From Bugula neritina (Eukaryota > Animalia > Bryozoa): a stretch of 64,000 nt of DNA. This document shows, piece by piece, positions 1 through 20,339 of this stretch; the stretch's first letter is position 1, and every line of letters starts with the position of its first letter. The notes beneath the pieces were generated by a model. It saw only the letters and a list, made by a program, of their open reading frames with translations, was not told where the DNA came from and ran no database searches. Where the stretch lies: the NCBI GenBank assembly GCA_964035545.1, contig OZ037765.1:24675504-24739503 (forward strand), written 5' to 3'. A program made the position numbers and the translations under genes.

Positions 1-3000
1 ACAAATATTTTTACTTATAAGGAATTTGCTTTTAAATGAAATGCATTTCGTTTATTCATGATGAAATATGGCCGTATGTTTTTAACTCACTGTTTATCCC
101 CTCTTCTAATAATAGAGTGGAATATAACTGTATTTTCTGTTTACAAAAGACTTGAAAGGGCAGTTTTTATAGCTAAGTTTGCTGTTAATTCTGGATTCTA
201 CAAATTACATGTATGTAAAAGCAGTATTAAAAATCAGTGCTACTCTGGTTGTTGAAATAAGAGTAGCAACTTATAGCTCATCCTTCTGCAACTTTGAGTT
301 GAGCTGGAATCTAATCAACATAATATTATTAATATAATGCCATTGATTGATCAGCGAATATTTGCCTCACAGTACAGCTTATATCATTGTATGAGTTTGA
401 ACTATTATATTCTTGTTGAACTGAATATATTATGCAATTATGATACACTGTTGGGCCATCAGCATGCTAATGAAATAAAAAAGGTCAAAAATCAGAAGGA
501 GTTTAACTTTTTCTTGTAAGCTCCTGTTGAAAATATGTGTAATGAAATTTCAAACTTTTCAAGTAAGGTTTGGTACAAATTTATCAAAATATTTCCTTTA
601 AAAAATTATTCGTAATAATCTAAATCTTACAAATTACTATCAGTCTGTCCACAGTCTTTGTTTTAACTGACTTAAAATCAAGTCAAATAGATTGAAATAA
701 ACCTAGACTATTGGCCTAAATTCCCAAATAGAAAAATGATTAAACTACCAACCCTGTTGTACAAAATAACTGTACAATTCTACACCAAGTTTTTCCTACA
801 CAAGCTTTTATTCCATATTAACTAATCACTATAAATAGTAGCTAAAGATAGTTATATACAGATCCCTGCCTTTTTATTGGTACAAAAAGCCTAATTTTTA
901 AACTATTTTAAAAAAGAAAAGTTTTATATTTTGTTGAGATGCAGCTAATGAAGATTATTTCTTAGAATAATATCGTTAAAAGATATGTAACAGGCAAATT
1001 TACACATAATCAAATTCGACAAGAAAACTGCTGTCAAGATTGATAAGTTGACATACACAAGCATCTGCAGTTCATTCCCATCATAATGTACTAAATGTTA
1101 ATTCCATCAAAGCTCTACACCACTAAATCAATATAGACCTACACTGTAGAACAAGTACTGCTTCAAGTGTTAGCTTTATCATGTGAAAGAAATATAAAGC
1201 AAATAATCTGTACATCATCCATCCATGTCAGCCTAAACTTAGTTATCTTCATTTCTTATACTGCAGGCAGTTCAAATATATGGTTAATTGCAAGAGTAGA
1301 GCATGAAATGAGCTTATAATAATATATTCAACAAGTTTTCACTGGCAAACTTGATCTATATAGACTTGTTTTGTGTAGTAATTCTTTTTTGGTATCTTTG
1401 AACTTAATTTTATTGAAATACCTAAACTTTTGTCTTCCATCTCAGCTGATAAATTGTTTCTAAGAAAATAAAATTACACATTGCAAGCCATTATTACGCA
1501 ACGTAGCAATTATACTAAACTGCATACTACCTTGCAACTGGTTGCAGGTTTTCAAAGTAAATAGTTCGCTTGCAGTCGATGCCCTGTGAATAAATTGCTG
1601 AACTGTTAAAACCAACATGCTACTTATTAAAGACTCTATTAGCGCATATCTCTACACAGCCCATGTAGAAAAAAGTATTTATGCCACATTTTAGTGTAAT
1701 AAAGCAATATAAAAAATGTTGATAATGAAAAATAGAAATCCCATGGTTTTGTTAGCGTTAATGATTTATATAAGTTAAGTTTTTTCCCACATCTAACTGT
1801 GGTCGTTTCTGAAATTTTTCAAACTTACTGTGTCAAGCTGTTGCTGAAACTACAAGTTATTGCATTGGGTATAACATATTGCTTACCTCTACAATACGAA
1901 GTACCACTGACCTTGTGACACATGTATGTTTTACTGTAGCCTTCCCATTGCCATGTTCTGACCACAATGACATCATATGTAGACTACACTGTGTGTGTCA
2001 TTGGCCAGCTGTCAACACTGCTTACATCACAATTATGCCTTAGCTGCCTGTATATATAATATAAATGCTAAATGGGTTCTAACAAACCTATAGTTTCATG
2101 AGAATATTCAAAAATAATTAAGTTTATAAATTTTATGGTAGCGTCTGATTTTCTGGAACTTTATAAAGCTACCAAAAAACCTGCATGAAGCAGTTTCAAG
2201 ACAAGCCAAATAACTAAAATCTGCTTTATACTTTCTTAGCAATATGAACCCTGTTATTATACAGCCTGCAGTTATCAACAGACTCGTTATATAAAACTCT
2301 TACTATTAAAAAAGTTTTTTTGATGAATGTGATTAGTATATATGTCATATAAATTGCAGGGATCTTAGCTTTTTACTATAGTTATATTATTTATATTATT
2401 TACTTAATTTTATACATATCTATACAATAAGCTTACTTACATAAACAACATCCGGCATAATATTATTAAACTTACTTTTATTTGATACTGAAAACACTAC
2501 GTTGTCTGCTGCCGTTGTTTTAAAACTATTTGATAAAAGCAGCAGTTCTTAACTCACCTTTAATTTTAACAGCAGTGTAGTCTAGCCGTTCTCTCTCAAA
2601 GCGAGGCTAGTGCTAGCAGCTGTAATGGTAGTGATGCTTAGTACAGTACGTATTGCTCCTCTTAACTCAACGACCTAAAGCCCTACACAACATCAATATT
2701 CTGATACATTAGCATTCAAGTTAATTGAAGAGAACCGTATAGTTAGTACAACTATTGATGAGGATTCTAATGTATAATGATATAATGCTGTACCACTTAC
2801 TGCAGCTCATAGCTCTATGTTACATTCAACTATAATGCAGATAACGAAGTTCCACACTCAGCATGGCAAGTATATAACGTTAGAAACAGCATAATGATTA
2901 TACAGCAATGCACACTGCAGCATATTAACACCAAGCTGTTCAGGCCTATATTATGAGCATATATAATATCAAGCAAACATAATCTTAATGCAACGAATGA

Positions 3001-4557
3001 TAAACCCTGCTAGTGCATCTGCTGGGGTCAGGTTTCATAAGTCACCTGACTTCCATATATAGAGAGCACTGACAGTAAAGGTAATAACAGTATCGCTAGG
3101 TTATATACCTGTGTGTATAATTGAGTATACTTGCCTAGTTTACATACCATATAATGGTGAGGATAAATTACGTTGCTATCTCACTTTATAAGAAAATTAC
3201 AGGAATATATTTTAAAGCAATACCAATATAACATTCAAATCTGTAGTAGCAGGCAGCATGGATGCAATTTTTGGAGTGAAAACCAGTTTTTTATTCTAAC
3301 GAAATAATTCCTTAATCAGTGAAAAAAAGTGTGGTACATATTAGTGCTTTTTAAAAAACATAAGGCTTTACATGCAACAAGGTTTTAAAGGAAGCAGCTT
3401 CAAATAAGATAAAAAAGCAGTTGAAATATTAAGTTTTTAATGTTGCAAACAAGAGACAAACTTGATACAAGAACTTTATTTGTCTGTTTTCTTTACCAAG
3501 TGCTGTACTCCCATATCCACCTATTAACTAATTTTCAGTTTGGTCCATAAATACTTTAATATAAATCCTTATCTACATGACAAGCTTTAAATAATTACAA
3601 TTTTTTAATAGGACAACTTGATTATAATGCAATAAAGCGTAATTAAATGTAAAATAATGTTTCAAGATATGAAGGCCTTAGGGTACAGTAGTTATAGTGA
3701 CATATGGTAGTGCCTATTCTGGGGGAGGAGGGGTTGTGTCATGGGTAGCAAGAGATTCACTCCATAGATTAGGCAACTTTAACCCTCAATAGGGACCAGT
3801 CTCTTACAGCTACAGTGTGGTACTAACAGCTTTATAGCAAAGCGCTGCTTATAGACAAGTATTTAATTATTTAGCAACTTTGCTAATGCTTTTGGATCTG
3901 AACAACAAAATACAATACTTCAAAGTGATACTCCTCACAATATTCTTTATTATACTATTGTTTTACTTTTATTGTAGTACATCAGACTCATTCAAGTGTG
4001 GCTTTATAACATGTCTATTGGTTTCAGCAAACTTCAAAGGTTTTAACACTTACATTGCACCAGGCCTAAGCAGCATTTGACTGCATGCAATTTTTTGCAT
4101 CTTTTTAGCAAAATGCAACACATGCTTGTGTTACATGAATTAAATAGCACTCCTGTGAAGTATTTTGGTATGAATATTTGTTTTAGAATTAAAAAAAATG
4201 TTAGCAATATTTAAATATTGGGCTAATCTTGATTTTAATTAGATGACTAAAGTCAAAATTTGAAAATGACTTCTTGGTAATGTCAGCATAATTCTTTATT
4301 TTCAGAGCATATTTTTTTTCTTCTATTAATAAACCCTGATATTGTGAACTTGTATGCAATTCACAGGTTAGTTAGTTATATAACTGTTGACACTCAATTC
4401 ACAAGTGCTTACAGAATGATGATTGAGTAGTAAACGTAGTCACATCTAGTTACGCACACTTTTTCTACCGGTTCCCACTTATAAAGCTTTACCCACCGGA
4501 GGTTTACGTATGCAAGCTGCTCAGTTGGTTCACTTAGATTTGTGACTTTCAGAAAAC

Positions 4558-6699: not shown

Positions 6700-7170
6700 T
6701 CCAATGACCAAGTAATACCCATGTGTAAACATCTTACACTAAATAAAGTGTAACAGTAAGCTTTTCTTTTACATAGATATTCAGGTTAGGCATATGGCTG
6801 ATACACACTTTTATGATATTAGTTGTTTTGTAATAATAAATGGGAAGCTTTGTTGTAGTTGAAAATTTCAAGCCAGAAATCAAAATAAAGATAAACCTAA
6901 ATGTTGGTAAATCTTTTGTATTACATACCTGTAATTCAATGTTTAAAAAATGTTCTTTTAATCTTTTAATGTTGTACATCAACGAACTTTTGATTTGTTA
7001 TGTGAGCTATTGTACATACATGCATAATGCATACATATACGTGTGCGTGCGTGCGCACGTGTGTGTGTGTGTAAGTACTTTTTTCTATGCTGATGAGGGG
7101 ACAAATCCCGAAACAGCTGCTGTCCACAGATAGAGATGTATATATAGCCTATATCCTACATATGAATCAT
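6700..7170 (+). mobile_element. Possible decayed Penelope-like element end (pseudo-LTR) carrying the hammerhead
   Basis: Frameshifted WEALL*L..FKPEIK at ~6841-6885 resembles the C-terminal E-x-L-x-I...KP-x-I/LN tail of PLE GIY-YIG domains. It is followed by T-rich/GT-repeat DNA and the hammerhead, which is the usual PLE order. Confidence 0.4.
7084..7130 (+). ncRNA. Minimal type I hammerhead ribozyme motif
   Basis: CUGAUGA 7090-7096; stem II GGGG/UCCC; GAAA 7110-7113; stem III ACAG/CUGU; GUC cleavage triplet 7122-7124; stem I UCUAUG/CACAGA (5 of 6 pairs). Confidence 0.75.
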
Positions 7171-11300: not shown

Positions 11301-12043
11301 AATACTGCATACCGGCAGCATTATACGAATCAACTTTACCAGTTGGAAATATTCTAGTCCACGCAATAGAAAACCTGTAGTGGGTCACCTAAAAGCCATC
11401 CAAGTCATGATATACAAACATAAATATGCTAAAAATATACCATATTTTGAGTAACTGCTTGATAGAGGGACACCCTGTTTACAAAGTAACACTACATACT
11501 CCCATCTCTTTCATCAGCTGCACGTCTTCTTTATATTTATTATAACTATCACAAGCAACATCTCCAGTATCTTGGTTGTAAATCACTCCGTCATGAGAAA
11601 ACTTGTCCCATATGCTTTCTCCTTTACCTAGATACAGTTTTACACCACATTGTTTTGATGGAAAGCATGCAACAAAAAGTGCACTTTCGTACTACCGTAA
11701 ATTTTGTACTACATGAAAAAAATAGTAATAATACACCTTATTTAAGATTAGCATCAGCAATTAAGCTTTGTGCTAGGGTATAGCACAAAGCTTAATTGCT
11801 GATGCTAACCTTTCGACCACTACTTAATACATACTATCATAAAACCGTGAGATTATCATTTAGGATCAACATTAACATACCACTGACGTTCCAAGCTCCT
11901 TCTATTTGATATGAGGCAGTAGCTGTCCCCCACATAAAGTTTGGTGGAAACTTTTTATGGAGAAAAGGATCATCTTTATGATGAACTGCAGAACACAAAT
12001 TGCTAACAGCAAAAAGTAGCAGTAGCTGCAGAACAGCTGCCAT
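8318..12043 (-). CDS. Glycoside hydrolase family 1 beta-glucosidase (lactase-phlorizin/GBA3-like, single GH1 domain, signal peptide), 8 exons
   Basis: Exons 12043-11881, 11627-11500, 11388-11131, 11027-10841, 10499-10260, 9719-9593, 9294-9110, 8565-8318, all GT-AG and phase-compatible. Motifs [44 protein letters not shown] (acid/base), YVTENG (nucleophile), WSLLDNFEW. Hydrophobic N-terminus [19 protein letters not shown]; ends GRVVFG*. Confidence 0.95.
11748..11808. repeat. Perfect 28-bp inverted repeat with 5-nt loop in GH1 intron 1
   Basis: TTAGCATCAGCAATTAAGCTTTGTGCTA-GGGTA-TAGCACAAAGCTTAATTGCTGATGCTAA. Confidence 0.95.
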
Positions 12044-12618
12044 TGTAAAGGTATGAAGTGAAGTGAGAAGATTAACAAGGACTGCACAGTTTTCTACTTA
12101 GCTGGACCAATAAAAATCGACCAATGGTGATACCGAGATAAATTGTTAGTTTGTAAGTAAGCATAAGGCACAGTTTCATACGCTTTGTAGAAGATAAAAT
12201 AACTTGAACAATATTAAACCAGTATTATATTCAACTATTGCAATAAGTAATTGTTGCAATTTGCTTTTTCTGAACAGAAGAATAATTAATTGTACACATT
12301 TACTGATGGAGAATTTAATAGAAAAATGAGCTTCCAAAAATAAATAGATAACTTTGGCTAGTAATTGGAATACATGTTTTGTAACTTGTTTATGTAGCAA
12401 AGATATTTTAGCATTTGCATAGTCATTAGGGAAGTTACTATCCGAGAATATTTCATAAAATCTAACGTGATTTAATTGAATAAAAGCTAGGTCATTTTTT
12501 TAAATTTATTTCTATAAATAAAAAAAGTATTATACGCTATTATTCAGTCAGTATTGGAATAAAAAAAACTTATTGATTGATGTTTAATAGAAGCAAAACC
12601 TCAAAAATGTCAATTTTA

Positions 12619-15600
12619 CTATACTCTTCGACGCTTCGATGCAACTGAAGGAGTTTCTGAGATTTGAGCAGAGGCTCTGGTTCTTTTAGACGGACGTTTA
12701 GGTGTATTGTCCTCAGAAAGCTGTTTAGTAGCAAGTTTTCCTTTATTTTTATTGACTGGCAACTCTGCTGAGGGCTGATCAAGTTCTAATGAATCTGCTA
12801 TGGACTGCTTATGGTCAGACTCTGAGTCTAAATCGGATATTGTCTCTGGGAATTCTTGCTCTGGTAAGCAAAAATCGGTGACCTCATTTGGAAAAGGTAT
12901 TGATTCAAACTCATCTAAAGCATCAACATCGTAGAGAGATTCCAGATATGACCATACATCCCGTATGGTGACCAACTTACTGAGAGAGTTCTTTAGCTGA
13001 TCCACAATCTTCACGATCGCAAAATGTTTATTTACACCTACTGGTTTATTATATCTGATAGCGTTTAAACATCGTAGGCATCCAGGTTATTTTGATAAAA
13101 TCAATTACTGTTAGTTGAAAGATCATACTTTTTTAGTTACATTCACAAAATATATAAAAAAAATCTCAACTCAATATACCAGAAAAAATGAATTAAAATA
13201 TATGTGTTAATAGCACTGATATTGACGTGACCGTGGCACATGAAAAATCTGAAAGAAGAGTTGTCTTCTTTTTTTCTATATTAATATATAGAGCTTGTCG
13301 TGAAAATAAAGATTTTAAAAAAAAATATTGTGACCCTCTGGTAACTTCCAGAATTTAGAAAATTGGCTCATATATTTCCTTTCATGTGGACAACAGCTCA
13401 CTTTTTTTTAAATTTATTTTGAAGCTCTTTTCGTAAAAAATATTTAAAAGTAAAAAATCCAAACTTTTTACAAATTGGTTCGGGCTTGATGTGAAAGGCA
13501 TTTAGACGAAGATGTCAAGGTCACCATTAATAAATTAATTTTATCACAATACTGCACGGAAAGTTAATGAAGTGAGCTGAAAATTAGGTTGCTAGCATAT
13601 TGATATACATTATATTGATTGTTGCAGTATTATTTTTTAAATTTGTTTTATCAGTTATGTTTAACTTCTTCATAGAGCTGCTGTTAGACTAAGAGTAAGA
13701 CATAATATTAGCAACAATGATAATAATATTAAATTCACGAAGAAGTATCACTATCACTATGTACTTACTCTATGAGTATGACTATGACTATCAGTATCAC
13801 TATGAGTGTCGTAATCGTATAAATTAATTATGAGTATGAGTATCACTATGACATTAACTCAATCAGTGATTGACTAATACTGTGAATATGACTATGCATA
13901 ACTCAATGAGAATATCAATATGAAGATGGCTTCTAATTCTTGTAACTTTTGACTATGACGATGCTGATAGTGATAGTGATAATCACTGCCAGCCCAAGTC
14001 TCATACTCATAGTGATACTATTACTATTGTTTATTAGTATTAATAATTAGTATTACTATTAGTACAACTACTAGTATTACTCATAGTTCTGTTAATGATA
14101 GTTTTAGAAGTTCTACTTCTACTTTTATAGTACGCTAGATTGTATATGTTGAACTCTACTCATTTTTTTACTACTAATGCTAATACTAATAGTAATAGTA
14201 ATAATGATTATAGTTGTAATAATGATAGTAATACTAATGGTAATAATAACTATTTAAATTTGATAATTTATGTTTTACAACAGCATTATCACTTATCAAT
14301 TACATTGGTTCATAATATGCTTATTTTAATTTTGCTTTGTGTGTTTTGTCATGTTATAAAATTAAGTTCGTATGGTCATTTAATGAACTAGAGAACTAGC
14401 CAAATGTTATGTAACAGTTGCAATAATTTACTATAAACTCAGTGAAATTTAAAACCTAATTGATATTACTATGACATTGATTGTACAGAGGTAGCTAAAA
14501 TATACATTAAATTACCAATAATTTTAACTCGCCAATACACTATGAGTAGAACAATCAAATGCAATGATAGAAAATTAATTAGTCACAGCAGCCCGTTGCT
14601 TGAAGAACATCGAGCTACAGGTCTAAAATTATGTAGTTTTGCGATCCATTACATAACAAAATAATTTTTTTCAAACTGGTTTAATACTTTTATTATGAAC
14701 ATGCTTATCAAAGTAACATGTTTGTAATGTATATTCTATTAAAAAGCAATCACATCAGGTTTTCAATTTGTATGTTGTACAATGTTTATTATGGTGACAA
14801 GTTACTAAATCATATGGTTCAGCTTTGTAAAGTAAAGCTGATAAAATAAATACAAGTATGTGATTGTTTTACTGCTATATATTAAATTTAAATAAGTTGA
14901 ATAATATCCTAGTGCAGTGAATTAGATATTTTTTAGCTTTGGTACACCTGTTTGTTATAGGCTAACATTCCACCAATAGAAGAATGGTGCAAGTAGAAGA
15001 AATTTCAGGCGCAGAAAGCTGGGGAGCAGTCAGAATGCTGCCAGAGTTGTGAAGAGGCACTTAAAAAATCTGAATTTCAATAATGACATGACATTCGTAA
15101 CATATCACCCTGGTGTATTTGAACTGACATGGCCAGCAGAGTTCTCGAAGTCACATTCAACAGCTATTTACATCATCATGGTTAGCTTAAATTTAATTCC
15201 TTTATCAGTCTCTAATATATAGTTTGATATCTGCTGTAAATTCGCTTAAGGAGCATACACATAACCAAAACTGAGTTACACTATAGTATTTGTTCTTGAA
15301 TATATTTACCAAGATAAGTAGATAATTTGCTAATTCATTAACAGTAAAATTATAATGATACAACAATTTTTCTTTTAGATGATTCAATCAATAACACAAG
15401 ACACTACAACATGGTTTTGCAGTTATAGAGTATTAATTTTCTGGCTCTTTCCAAATCTTCATAGAAGGCAAAGAAAACCACCGTCAGCTTGCCTTTATAA
15501 CTGAGTGCAAGCTTCTTCCACCTACAGATGATGATAAACAATTTGCTGATGTGGAACTTTCTAATTTTGTTTACAATGAAGATAGATTATAGGACATTAT

Positions 15601-18421
15601 TCTTTATGTAAAGATTGTCAAGTTTTGTTATAATTAAGAACAGTTTTAGTTTCAATAAATCAGTTCAACATTACGGACATCATTGCACAAACATTTTAAT
15701 CTTTACTACCTACAAAGGTATCTGATGGACTACTTGAAAATACAAAACTATACTCCAGATACACAATGAACTGACCAGCAAAGTTAAAATGAGTTGGAGA
15801 TGTAGAACATAATATTTTGTTCAAGGCTTTTCCCTGCTGTTGGAACCTTCTACTTCAGAACACTGAATTGAACAAACATATGTAGATATATAAAACTTTG
15901 CAAACAATAATAATGTGAAATTAGTTGCTAAGTATCACATTGCTAATAAATACAGCGTTGTGTAATGTTTTATTTAATTTTTTTTGAGCCATTTGATCTA
16001 TAGGCCCGCATAGTAATTACTATATTATAACTAATAAATGGCAGACACATTATGTCAGACCAGTCTCCATTTAAATAGAATAGTGTAGGCTATCAAATTT
16101 GTAGAAGTAAAAAACTTTCTTATTGAGTAAAATACTTACCTTTTTTTTCATGATGCCTCTACTGCTAAAAAGAGAAGTTTTTATCAATACAGCTCCATCA
16201 ATCTGTATCCCGATGAAGCTAGTAGTTTAGGAACATTTGTGGCGGGGAGTGTAGGCTGAGCTGCAGTATAGGAAGAACCCCAACATATGTAATCTATTCA
16301 GCACATTATATGTATTGTAGAAATTTATTCAAAAAAGAATTTAGAAAATGCTTTATGAAGCATGAACAAAGTAAAAATTAATGCTGGTGAAAGTAATATT
16401 ATTACACCCATTAGAGTTACTAGCAGCTATAGCATTAAAATTTGTATTTTTATAAAATGTGTCTAATTTATGCTACAAAGTTATTACTGCCAAAGGTTAC
16501 AAAATTTACCAGTCGCATTCATGCAGCTGATGGAGAATAACTAACCTTCACATGCAATAAATACAATTAGTAGCTCAATCTAAAACTAATGTTATGAGTA
16601 TAAGTTATAGTTATTCTAAGGAATAATTGCAAAAAAAGTTACTTGGAGGAATTTAACTCTTATTATAATGTAATTATCTTCCAAGATATATTACAACATC
16701 ACTACTTGGATGCATACAATGTCATATTTATATTGGCATCAACATAATTTTCAATAATTTCCAATCTATTAACTTGAGCATTATGATTGTGATTATTTTT
16801 TAAATAAGGCGATGATTAGGCACTGTTGGTATTTTGGTTCAATTTATTTATAACTGTAACAGGCAGAGTTGTAAATATAATGGATATATCAAAATTCCAA
16901 TGGGTATAGTACTCTAACACAACATTGATACTAATAATTGTAGTCACTTACTCTTAGAGTTAGTGAATGATGATACAGTCATAACAATTTGAATATCAAT
17001 CAGCATTAGAGATAGACTGACTGCTTTATAATATTATAGTTATTATGTCAAATTGAATTTATTCACTATAACTAAAAAAATTATGATTATAATTATAAAT
17101 TAAAATAATTTAAATATTATATAATATATTGATAATTATTGGAATCATAATTATATTTATTGTTATGATCATTATGATTATAATTATTTAATATTATCTT
17201 TATGTTTGTATTTAAAGTTGTTCCTTAAATCTAAAGTTGTTTAAGTTTTATAAATTTATTATAATTATATTACTGTATAAGTATTGCTATTAGTATTAGT
17301 ATAATTAAATTATTATAATTTATATTTTATTATTTATATTTATTTTACTTTTTATTTTAAGACCAACAGTTCAAATTAATACTTGTGTCGTTTGCTTTAT
17401 ATTATAACTTACAAGTATAACTATTAACATAATAATATTAGATTTGCTATTAGTATTACTATGAATATAAATATTTATGTTAATATAGCTATCGGTATAA
17501 CTTATACTTATAGTTATAACTAATATTACAAGTATTACTGTTAGTATTACTGTATTAGTTTCGAAACTGATCCTGCTCCGTAACATTTACATACTGATAC
17601 TGTCATATGATTATCATTATGACTAATAAGTAATAATGGTATTAATAAATATAACCATTGAATATTATTAATAATAGTTCACCAATACTAATAGGCGATA
17701 GTCATAGACTTAGAGTGAGAGTCATAGACATAGACTAGTGATACTCATACTGATAGTCATAGTGATAGTCATAGTGATACTCATACTGTGATTCACTGAT
17801 TCAATTACAAATTTTAAAACTTGGTTTCACGTAAACAACTACTAACCTATACTTCATCACAAAACGGTTGAAAATCATCATTTACTGCATATTTAAGAGT
17901 AATTTTCTGGTAGTGTGGTCGACATGATAATTGAAATTAAAATAGGAAAAATAATTATTTTGTGATTTACAGCAAGTTACAAACTAGCGAAATGGAATAG
18001 TCTATTTGAAAACAGTCAAATTAGTTACCTTTCTTGATGTTGCGTAGCTAACGTTAGTTATTAGTAGCCGCCCGAAGAGTAACATTCATGTGATTTGAGC
18101 TACGAATAACGAGAATCTGTGACAAACCCGCTTCTTAATAACTTTACGCGAAATAAACTCACGCTACAATAGGGCTATTTTGCCATCCCCACGTCAGAAT
18201 AGGACACGGAGGGCAAGCTCGCGGGCAAGTCTGGGCAAGTCTAAGACACCTAATATGACCACTTTTACTTGCATTTTTGTAGTGTTTTCGTATAAGAAAT
18301 TGGATAAAATGCTGATAAAACAGTTGAAAAGCATGCAAACTTTTGCTCAAATGTAATAAATAACCTGGATGCTTACGGCCTTTAATAATTTGGTTTCATC
18401 TTGTATACTCCACTCGGCCAT
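12619..18421 (-). CDS. MRGBP: MRG/MORF4L-binding protein (Eaf7 family, NuA4/TIP60 subunit), interrupted by a transposon
   Basis: 5' part 18421-18382 (MAEWSIQDETKLL) plus 3' part 13064-12619 (NAIRYNKPVGVNKHFAIVKI...VWSYLESLYDVDALDEFESIPFPN...KRRRV*) join in frame across one TTAA to give 161 aa. W-S-x-x-x-E-x-x-L, KPVGVNKHF and W-x-x-L-x-x-L-YD-x-x-AL are Eaf7/MRGBP hallmarks. A 5'UTR acceptor lies at ~18448. Confidence 0.88.
13735..14250. repeat. Period-3/6 low-complexity tract (ACTATG/AGTATG/ACTATC/AATAGT-type)
   Basis: For example ACTATCACTATG...ATGAGTATGACTATGACTATCAGTATCACTATGAGT. Similar tracts occur at 16950-17800, 18750-19250, 23600-24450 and 24960-25620. Confidence 0.8.
14961..15592 (+). 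pseudogene. KolX / P2X7 C-terminal ballast-like Cys-rich protein remnant inside the transposon
   Basis: Two exon-like blocks (~14961-15180 and 15379-15592) translate, through stops and frameshifts, as EEWCK*KKFQ...SECCQSCEE...YHPG...VLEVTFNSYLHHH / WFCSYRVLIFWLFPNLHRRQRKPPSACLYN*VQ..PP. This matches the family pattern WC-x-C-x-x-C...CC...HPG...YR-x-x-x-x-W...R-x-x-x-P-x-C...FP. Confidence 0.75.
18211..18242. promoter_or_regulatory. p53-family consensus response element (three RRRCWWGYYY half-sites) in the transposon subterminal region
   Basis: GGGCAAGCTC (18211-18220), a 2-bp gap, then GGGCAAGTCT GGGCAAGTCT (18223-18242) with no spacer. Confidence 0.55.
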
Positions 18422-20339
18422 ATTCAAAGAGCCGCGTTGCTGCCAACCTAAAAATACACATTAGCAACTGTAACAAGTACATATAGACATATATACAATG
18501 CTGGAAAATATTAATAATGAAATTTTTTTGATGAATTATCAAGTATTAAGGATAAAGCAAGTTAAGAGTCACAAATCAAAAAATTAGGTATGTAAAAAAA
18601 ACGAACAATTCATTAAGCAAATAAAAAAGTCCCAAGAAAGAAGATAATCATAAGAAAACTAAAATGAAGGCAATGGAACAAATAGGCAGATATGAATTTG
18701 ACACAACTGCTAAAACTAGAAGTACTCAAGATTAAAAACCTTGGAGACTAATACTAATACTAATAGTAATAGTAATACTAATACGACTAGTAATAGTATT
18801 AGTAGCAGCATCAATATCACATCAATAAACATAATTAAACATCAATATGACTTATACTTATAGTTATACTTATTCACTCATTACTTATGAGTTATGACTT
18901 AATCTTATAGTTATTACTTATACTTACTAAAAATTAAAACAAACTACACAATATTAAATTCAATATACACATTATCATTATGATTACTAGAGAGTAGAGT
19001 TGTGTTCTTAACTAGCATGTCAAGGTTTTACTAGCATAGTAAACAAACTTCCAACAATATTATTTGGTGTAATTCTCAATTTGATTGTTCAATCATAATC
19101 ATAATCATAATGAATATGATAATCATAATATAAGTATAACTAATAAACTATAACTATAACTATAACTATAAGTATAAGTATAAGTATTAGTATAACTATA
19201 ACTATAAGTATAGGTATTAAAGTAATAACATTAACTACAACTACAAGAATTAAATTATTTAAAGCTCACAAACGCTTCTAATTTCGTATAATGAAAATTA
19301 CTCTTAAAATTATAGAATCCTGAATTAAAGTGAAGTAATAAGTATTTATGTTTTTAATTAAGTTTACCATTCAATTGCTCCTAAATTGATATGATTTAGA
19401 AAAAAAGAAATAACTTTGTTGGAAACGTTAAGCTAATTAGGCGCTACTGAAAGTCGTAAGAAAAGACAACTCGAAATAAGAAAATGAGAATAACATTTTA
19501 GTGGCCAAACACAACTGTTTTGCCACCAATGTATATTGTTCAACGCATTGAACTATAACACTTCTAGTTTCATTTCAGTGGTTCAAAGCAACACAAAACA
19601 ACGTAAACTTGCAACCATCATTAGATGGCTATGAAAAATCCAAAAAGGTTCACTAAACTTGGTTATGTCTTTCACCTAAATACCAACATTTTATGGATGT
19701 TGTCGATTATTGCCAAATGAAGGTAATTAATTAGTTTAACGCTTCATTAAATTATAGCTCTTGTATAACGTAGGATAAATGTAGAATTGTCTTCATTAAT
19801 TTGAGATATTAGTATGCCTTTATATTTACTTACACAACTAGTTGCAAGTGATACTACACAATTAAATAAACCAGTCAATAAAAAATTTCATGCTAGTATA
19901 TGTAAACTTGTACAGCCTATAGCCCTATACTGTGTCAAAAGACAATTAAAGTAACTAGTATTGCATTAAAGTACTTGCAAACATACTATTTAAACCAAAA
20001 TGTAAAACAGAAACAACAGGCAAAATATTACTTAGATGATTAGCGGTGGCTTGTGAGTAGCTTTCACAATTCAGATGATGCGTATGATTACTTGTATGAA
20101 CCTAACATGAATAAAAATTTACAGTGAATACAAAAGTTGCATCATAATTTGTTTCCAGTGTCCTATAAAAGTTTTCAATCTTGTAGAAGACAATATTGTT
20201 CCTCACCATGGCAGGATCCAGAGTATTTATTTTTATTAAATAATTACAATATATTGATCCAAAAAAGTGCAGCAAATGCTTTGCCCACAACTTTTTTTCA
20301 TGGTAGTATCTAGCCAAATAGGCAACAATTTTAGTTTCA

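What the first reader, a model, noticed from the sequence alone, without database searches (positions are those of the whole stretch)
12619..18421. MRGBP is split at codon 14 by a 5.3-kb TTAA-targeting element; only precise removal restores the gene
Seen: minus strand ATG...AAA TTA TTAA[AGGCCGTAAGCATCCAGGTTATTT ... AAATAACCTGGATGCCTACGATGT]TTAA ACGCTATCAGATAT... Removing the element and one TTAA gives KLL-N-AIRYNKPVGVNKHF and a stop-free 161-aa Eaf7/MRGBP. The 5' TIR contains a good donor (GCC|GTAAGC), but the nearest AG acceptors (ATCAG|, CCAG|, GTAG|, AACAG| inside the element) lead straight to stops. The first phase-0 AG (GTG AAG|) would delete the conserved KPVGVNKHF motif, and the 3' half has no Met for restart. 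The paradox is that the element looks old (4/24 TIR mismatches, three at the extreme end; cargo gene full of stops) while both host halves are undamaged. Inference: (a) a recent null allele made by a trans-mobilised non-autonomous copy; (b) removal from the RNA as a TIR-paired non-canonical intron, for example GCC|GT...AC|GCT, which is in frame; or (c) precise somatic DNA excision. Options (b) or (c) would be a new gene-reconstitution mechanism in an animal.
Basis: partly seen in the sequence, partly recalled or inferred. Interest (0 to 1): 0.9.

Follow-up and report, generated by a model that had tools for sequence, protein, structure and literature searches.

The report
Young transposon insertion in bryozoan MRGBP
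A very recently mobile DNA transposon, present in about 105 copies, has landed in a chromatin gene on the one haplotype that was assembled for this bryozoan colony; other samples carry the gene intact, so this is most likely an ordinary insertion mutation and not a new way of rebuilding genes.

Summary
The structure is real: a 5,313-bp TTAA-flanked element (window 13069-18381) splits single-exon MRGBP/Eaf7 at codon 13/14, and removing it with one TTAA gives a stop-free 161-aa frame. The paradox is not real. The element is very young: two other copies are identical over all 5,313 bp, and about 105 copies share the same asymmetric ends, so the TIR 'mismatches' are a family trait, not decay. No cargo gene could be shown. 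The genome matches the Darwin Tree of Life Bugula neritina assembly, which is one haplotype. Another B. neritina assembly and a metagenome contig hold the empty site in DNA (intact 486-bp gene, one TTAA), although on a haplotype about 8% diverged. No precise removal register has legal splice dinucleotides. Best reading: a recent insertion allele of a non-autonomous, Kolobok-like transposon, probably heterozygous. The scan's notes held no earlier record of this element.

The parts
18448..18449 (-). Likely splice acceptor AG of a 5' UTR intron, 26 nt before the ATG (inferred from sequence; conserved in L022 and L023)
18382..18421 (-). MRGBP 5' half: ATG at 18421, 13 codons plus one base, ending in the left TTAA
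18382..18385 (.). Left target-site duplication TTAA
18358..18381 (-). Left terminal inverted repeat, 24 bp, begins AGG; holds donor-like GT at 18376 and 18364
13069..18381 (-). Non-autonomous TTAA DNA transposon, 5,313 bp, about 105 copies, no transposase and no recognisable gene; AT-rich hexamer microsatellite tracts near both ends
13069..13092 (+). Right terminal inverted repeat, 24 bp, begins ACA on the + strand; differs from the left one at 4 positions in this subfamily
13065..13068 (.). Right target-site duplication TTAA
12619..13064 (-). MRGBP 3' half to the stop codon; Pfam Eaf7 (PF07904); 99% identical in protein to B. neritina MRGBP P0001

Best explanation
A non-autonomous cut-and-paste DNA transposon of a currently or very recently active family was mobilised in trans, inserted at the TTAA spanning codons 13-14 of the single coding exon of MRGBP, and duplicated it (shown). 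The insertion is so recent that neither gene half has had time to decay (shown by copy identity). The allele is a null or near-null: read-through stops 24 codons in, and only internally deleted products can come from canonical splicing (shown in silico). The colony most likely gets MRGBP from an empty second haplotype that the haploid assembly does not display (inferred). The mobilising transposase is unidentified; a Kolobok-type enzyme is the most likely (inferred from TTAA, an AGG end and imperfect TIRs).
For: Copies: 2 identical over 5,313 bp, 1 with one substitution, at least 23 full length at 93-100%; 95% upper bound on divergence from an identical copy 0.06%. About 105 paired ends, TTAA in nearly all; 19 of 20 fetched copies have TTAA on both sides. 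Empty site in DNA: GCA_010799875.2 contig (L022, same ThiF - MRGBP - GH1 order) and a Logan contig (L023), both with an unbroken 486-bp gene and one TTAA. Orthologues in Watersipora and other samples are also unbroken single-exon ORFs. Gene halves versus L022: 6 synonymous and 3 nonsynonymous changes, pN/pS 0.14. The genome matches tzBugNeri2.1 (216.00 Mb, 320 scaffolds plus mitochondrion, longest 35.64 Mb), stated to be one haplotype with a second deposited apart (PMC11480708). 17 runs in 5 studies hold 0.26 of the words of 12400-13068, close to the 0.296 that the empty L022 haplotype shares. Other copies sit mostly outside long frames; 1 of 19 interrupts an rve integrase frame.
Against: The empty haplotype differs by 7.8% over 14 kb and may belong to a sibling cryptic species, so polymorphism within one population is not directly shown. 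The 0.66 share of run X1 fits a heterozygous source (about 0.63 expected if contigs keep one allele per bubble) but also equals the share of words lying wholly in the coding part (0.657), so it is weak. No autonomous partner with these ends was found.
Confidence: 0.87

Rival explanations
1. The colony is homozygous for the insertion and lives with a null or a weak allele; any product comes from ordinary splicing to cryptic AGs or through small exons inside the element, giving a deleted or lengthened N terminus.
For: Only one locus in the assembly. In-frame GT-AG options exist: 18413 to 13055 (147 aa, keeps KPVG, loses most of the first helix), 18376 to 13009 (144 aa, loses KPVG), and three internal-exon paths. 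MRGBP is an accessory TINTIN-type subunit (PMC7047200); yeast eaf7 deletion is viable (own knowledge).
Against: The gene was under purifying selection (pN/pS 0.14) and is kept in all bryozoan samples found. An insertion this young is rarely homozygous in a wild colony (inference). The donors are weak and the products lose conserved residues.
Confidence: 0.07
2. The element is removed from the RNA as a non-canonical, TIR-paired intron (GT at 18376 to AC at 13063), giving a 162-aa protein with KA in place of N.
For: The junction is in frame and stop-free; the donor GTAAGC is good; the 24-bp TIRs could pair and bring the ends together.
Against: All six precise registers have illegal ends (TT..GT, TA..TT, AA..TT, AA..TA, AG..AA, GG..AA). 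GT-AC is not a normal U2 or U12 pair, and no pyrimidine tract precedes that AC (sequence; own knowledge of splicing). The AC lies in host sequence, so it is not a family feature, and copies are not concentrated in exons. The paradox that motivated it is gone.
Confidence: 0.02
3. The gene is restored by regular, programmed precise excision in somatic cells, as with ciliate IESs.
For: Precise excision would restore the frame. TTAA elements of the piggyBac kind excise precisely (10.1101/015289), and intact piggyBac and Kolobok-type transposases exist in this genome.
Against: The assembly comes from an adult colony, mostly soma, and holds the filled site here and at about 105 other places. The ends are not piggyBac-like, and KolobokP excision is reported as imprecise (PMC9587614). 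Occasional somatic excision (about 1e-3 to 1e-4 per cell for Tc1, PMC12632400) is ordinary and would not supply a tissue.
Confidence: 0.01
4. Assembly artefact: a repeat copy was misplaced into the gene.
For: Three identical copies could confuse an assembler.
Against: Exact TTAA duplication at both ends with unique flanks that join perfectly to the empty allele; HiFi reads at 132-fold coverage normally span 5.3 kb (PMC11480708; read length from own knowledge).
Confidence: 0.02

Closest known systems
Kolobok superfamily, non-autonomous members (Xenopus T2-MITE / XKol; PMC9587614, PMC6004289)
   Same: Strict TTAA target duplication; one end begins AGG, as in the T2 terminal motif; short TIRs whose left and right versions differ in a family-fixed way, as in the XKol table of PMC6004289; young Kolobok-type transposases are present in the same genome.
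   Different: The other end begins AC, so the element reads AG...GT and fails the RR...YY signature at one end; no transposase or KolX; 5.3 kb, far longer than a MITE; no similarity to the Kolobok-type loci fetched, whose one visible end is TTAA then GGCTGG.
piggyBac non-autonomous elements
   Same: TTAA target duplication; precise excision would restore the gene.
   Different: Ends are not the pyrimidine-first (CC/CAC type) ends of piggyBac (own knowledge; contrast stated in PMC9587614); no piggyBac transposase piece in the element. Ends of the genome's own piggyBac copies could not be read.
Introners (transposon-derived spliceosomal introns; PMC9860276)
   Same: A non-autonomous DNA transposon with TIRs and TSD inside a coding exon, with a donor-like site near its end.
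   Different: No usable AG at the 3' junction in phase with that donor; family median lengths of Introners are 30-654 nt against 5.3 kb here; copies are mostly outside coding frames.
Ciliate internal eliminated sequences (PMC3464196, abstract)
   Same: A transposon-like insert in a coding sequence that only precise DNA removal would repair.
   Different: IESs are absent from the somatic genome and flanked by TA; here the insert stands in DNA of an adult colony and no germline/soma genome split is known in bryozoans (own knowledge).

Membership tests
MRGBP/Eaf7 | Eaf7 domain (PF07904) and orthology | tested here: met
   E 1.1e-12 above the curated cut-off; 99% to B. neritina MRGBP, same gene order
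Kolobok | TTAA-specific 4-bp TSD | tested here: met
   19 of 20 copies with TTAA on both sides; about 105 ends
Kolobok | Termini 5'-RR and YY-3' | tested here: not met
   AG at one end, AC at the other, in all 20 copies; met at one end only
Kolobok | Own DDD/E transposase with C/DxxH, or shared ends with an autonomous Kolobok | tested here: inconclusive
   None in the element or its longer copies; no match to 16 PF20700 loci, of which only one end of one family was visible
Kolobok (Kol0) | KolX accessory gene | tested here: inconclusive
   No Pfam or homologue hit in 36 frames of 14250-17100; no KolX profile was available for a direct test
piggyBac | TTAA TSD | tested here: met
piggyBac | Pyrimidine-first termini | tested here: not met
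   Both ends begin with A
piggyBac | Precise excision | not testable with these tools
Introner | Splice sites (GT/GC/GA donor, AG acceptor) at or near both ends that keep the frame | tested here: not met
   No legal pair within the junctions; nearest canonical options delete 14-18 residues net
Introner | Shown to be spliced out of mRNA | not testable with these tools
Introner | Many copies lying as introns in genes | tested here: not met
   Of 19 other copies one splits an integrase frame, one a 119-aa frame without Pfam hit, the rest no frame over 74 aa
Ciliate-type IES | Absent from somatic DNA | tested here: not met
   Present in an assembly from an adult colony at about 105 sites

The most novel reading that the evidence does not exclude
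This colony is homozygous for the insertion and still makes full-length MRGBP, because the element is taken out of the RNA at a GT-AC junction guided by its paired ends, or is excised precisely from DNA in most somatic cells. Not excluded only because no reads could be laid.
Probability: 0.03. Interest if true: 0.8.

Novelty: new member of a known kind. Interest (0 to 1): 0.12.

Why it matters
As found, it matters little: a fresh transposon insertion seen on one haplotype is common in wild invertebrate genomes. Two modest points remain. It marks an apparently undescribed, very young family of 5-kb non-autonomous TTAA transposons whose two ends differ in a fixed way (AGG versus ACA), which could help show what a Kolobok-like transposase needs at each end. 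It is also a caution for annotation: fixed TIR asymmetry is not a sign of age, and a gene broken in a haploid assembly is not a gene lost. The allele would be a natural reporter of excision precision if anyone works on this family.

Tried and rejected
The joined gene model was built only inside local scripts for comparison with L022/L023; it was never sent to a search, and the halves were searched apart by reference. Cargo gene: 36 frames against Pfam gave only E 0.01-0.02 noise; one frame had no homologue; another hit a bacterial repeat protein with zero matched stretches and no tblastn match, rejected as an artefact. A second MRGBP copy in the assembly: none. JGI/ENA metagenome scan gave only other bryozoan-like orthologues at 53-58%. 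The P0001 cluster has one member, so no intact protein of the window's haplotype is on record there. Sola3 (TTAA, GAG ends; own knowledge) was considered and set aside because the ends differ; a paper search found nothing.
Full report
Observation. On the minus strand the gene starts at 18421, runs 13 codons and one base to a TTAA at 18385-18382, is interrupted by 5,313 bp (18381-13069), and resumes after a second TTAA (13068-13065) to a stop at 12619. Removing the insert with one TTAA gives a stop-free 161-aa frame; reading into the insert stops after 24 codons; the two 24-bp ends are inverted repeats with mismatches at positions 2, 3, 4 and 9. The 3' half is Pfam Eaf7, and each half occurs once in the assembly.

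The element is young, not old. A search of the genome with the insert returned at least 23 full-length copies at 93-100%; those on C6 and C7 are identical over every base and one on C4 differs by one substitution and a 3-bp indel. Zero differences in 5,313 bp bound the divergence at about 0.06%. The terminal asymmetry is the same in all 20 copies fetched, and the two end motifs with their TTAA occur 106 and 105 times in the genome against 0 for the reversed controls. The mismatches are therefore a property of the family. Family-fixed differences between left and right TIRs are also seen in Xenopus Kolobok elements (PMC6004289, Table 5). The supposed decayed cargo gene could not be shown: no domain or homologue was found and codon changes between copies in the six best frames tested are near neutral. 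With a young element, two intact gene halves need no special explanation.

The empty site exists as DNA. The nearest protein is B. neritina MRGBP, 161 aa. It is encoded without a break on a 267-kb contig of assembly GCA_010799875.2, between the same ThiF and glycoside hydrolase genes, and on a Logan contig of another run. Both show a single TTAA at the junction, match the window on both sides and contain nothing of the element. The coding halves differ from them at 9 bases, 6 synonymous (pN/pS 0.14). Watersipora and other bryozoan-like orthologues are likewise unbroken single-exon genes. A limit: that haplotype differs from the window by 7.8% over 14 kb, and B. neritina is a complex of cryptic species (PMC11480708), so it may be a sibling lineage and not an allele of the same population.

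The assembly shows one haplotype. Size, scaffold count and longest scaffold identify the genome as tzBugNeri2.1, described as one haplotype with the second deposited separately. The lack of a second MRGBP in G000 therefore says nothing about the colony's other chromosome. Of 20 public runs, 17 in five studies, three of them from another sample of the same study as X1, hold 0.26 of the words of 12400-13068, near the 0.296 shared with the empty haplotype; this suggests that the empty-type haplotype is the common one. Run X1 holds 0.66, which fits a heterozygous source colony but has another possible reading (the coding part alone is 0.657 of the words), so I give it little weight. I worked beside those places afterwards, and the joined model was not used in any search. 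Zygosity is thus inferred.

Splicing and excision. The junction has a 5-bp direct repeat, so exact removal has six registers; none has GT-AG, GC-AG or AT-AC ends. Canonical options give 143-148-aa products missing conserved N-terminal residues, and three internal-exon paths would alter the first helix; these would be leaky, ordinary cryptic splicing. The family does not behave like Introners (PMC9860276): it is far longer, and of 19 other insertions only one clearly splits a coding frame, an rve integrase. Precise excision is the rule for piggyBac (10.1101/015289) but was reported as imprecise for KolobokP (PMC9587614); sporadic somatic excision, as for Tc1 (PMC12632400), is possible and ordinary. 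A programmed version is contradicted by the filled site in DNA of an adult colony.

What kind of element. It works like a non-autonomous TTAA-targeting cut-and-paste transposon. Length classes of about 4.8, 5.0, 5.3 and 7.0 kb arise from internal deletions and nested inserts; none carries its own transposase. The genome has intact Kolobok-type (PF20700) and piggyBac transposases, but the one Kolobok-type end that could be read is different. TTAA, one AGG end and imperfect TIRs point to Kolobok; the other end begins AC and fails the RR...YY signature, so I call it Kolobok-like and do not file it as a member.

Verdict. A real but ordinary event: a very recent insertion allele, probably heterozygous, of an apparently undescribed non-autonomous transposon family. 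Interest 0.12. The gene-reconstitution reading keeps about 3% until the alternate haplotype or the HiFi reads are checked.

Noticed in passing
window 4460-24925 versus L022: The window's haplotype differs from the other B. neritina assembly by 7.8% over 14 kb, and most public runs resemble the other one; the sequenced colony may carry a divergent or cryptic-species haplotype here, possibly as a hybrid.
   Followed up: partly
L025, L026, L027 (about 1900-3670): Three 7.0-kb copies of the element carry the same nested 1.8-kb Tc1-like relic (HTH hits, broken transposase), so the family went on transposing with a passenger.
   Followed up: partly
L012:966-1499 and beyond the element: Another copy splits a 355-aa frame with an rve integrase domain, resembling a Maverick/Polinton-type integrase (resemblance from own knowledge, not tested).
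   Followed up: partly
G000:C8:9944241-9954736: Two copies of the element lie head to tail and share one TTAA at 9949487-9949490.
   Followed up: no
L034-L040, L042: A young autonomous Kolobok-type family: about 673-aa PF20700 transposase, eight copies at over 99% identity, one end TTAA then GGCWGG; the other end lay outside the loci.
   Followed up: partly
window 11744-11812: A 32-bp near-perfect palindrome in the first intron of the glycoside hydrolase gene; L022 and L023 have only one arm, so it looks like a local inverted duplication.
   Followed up: partly
L002:1232-1495 and 6816-6905: An identical copy of the element interrupts a 119-aa stop-free frame with no Pfam hit; probably chance.
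   Followed up: partly
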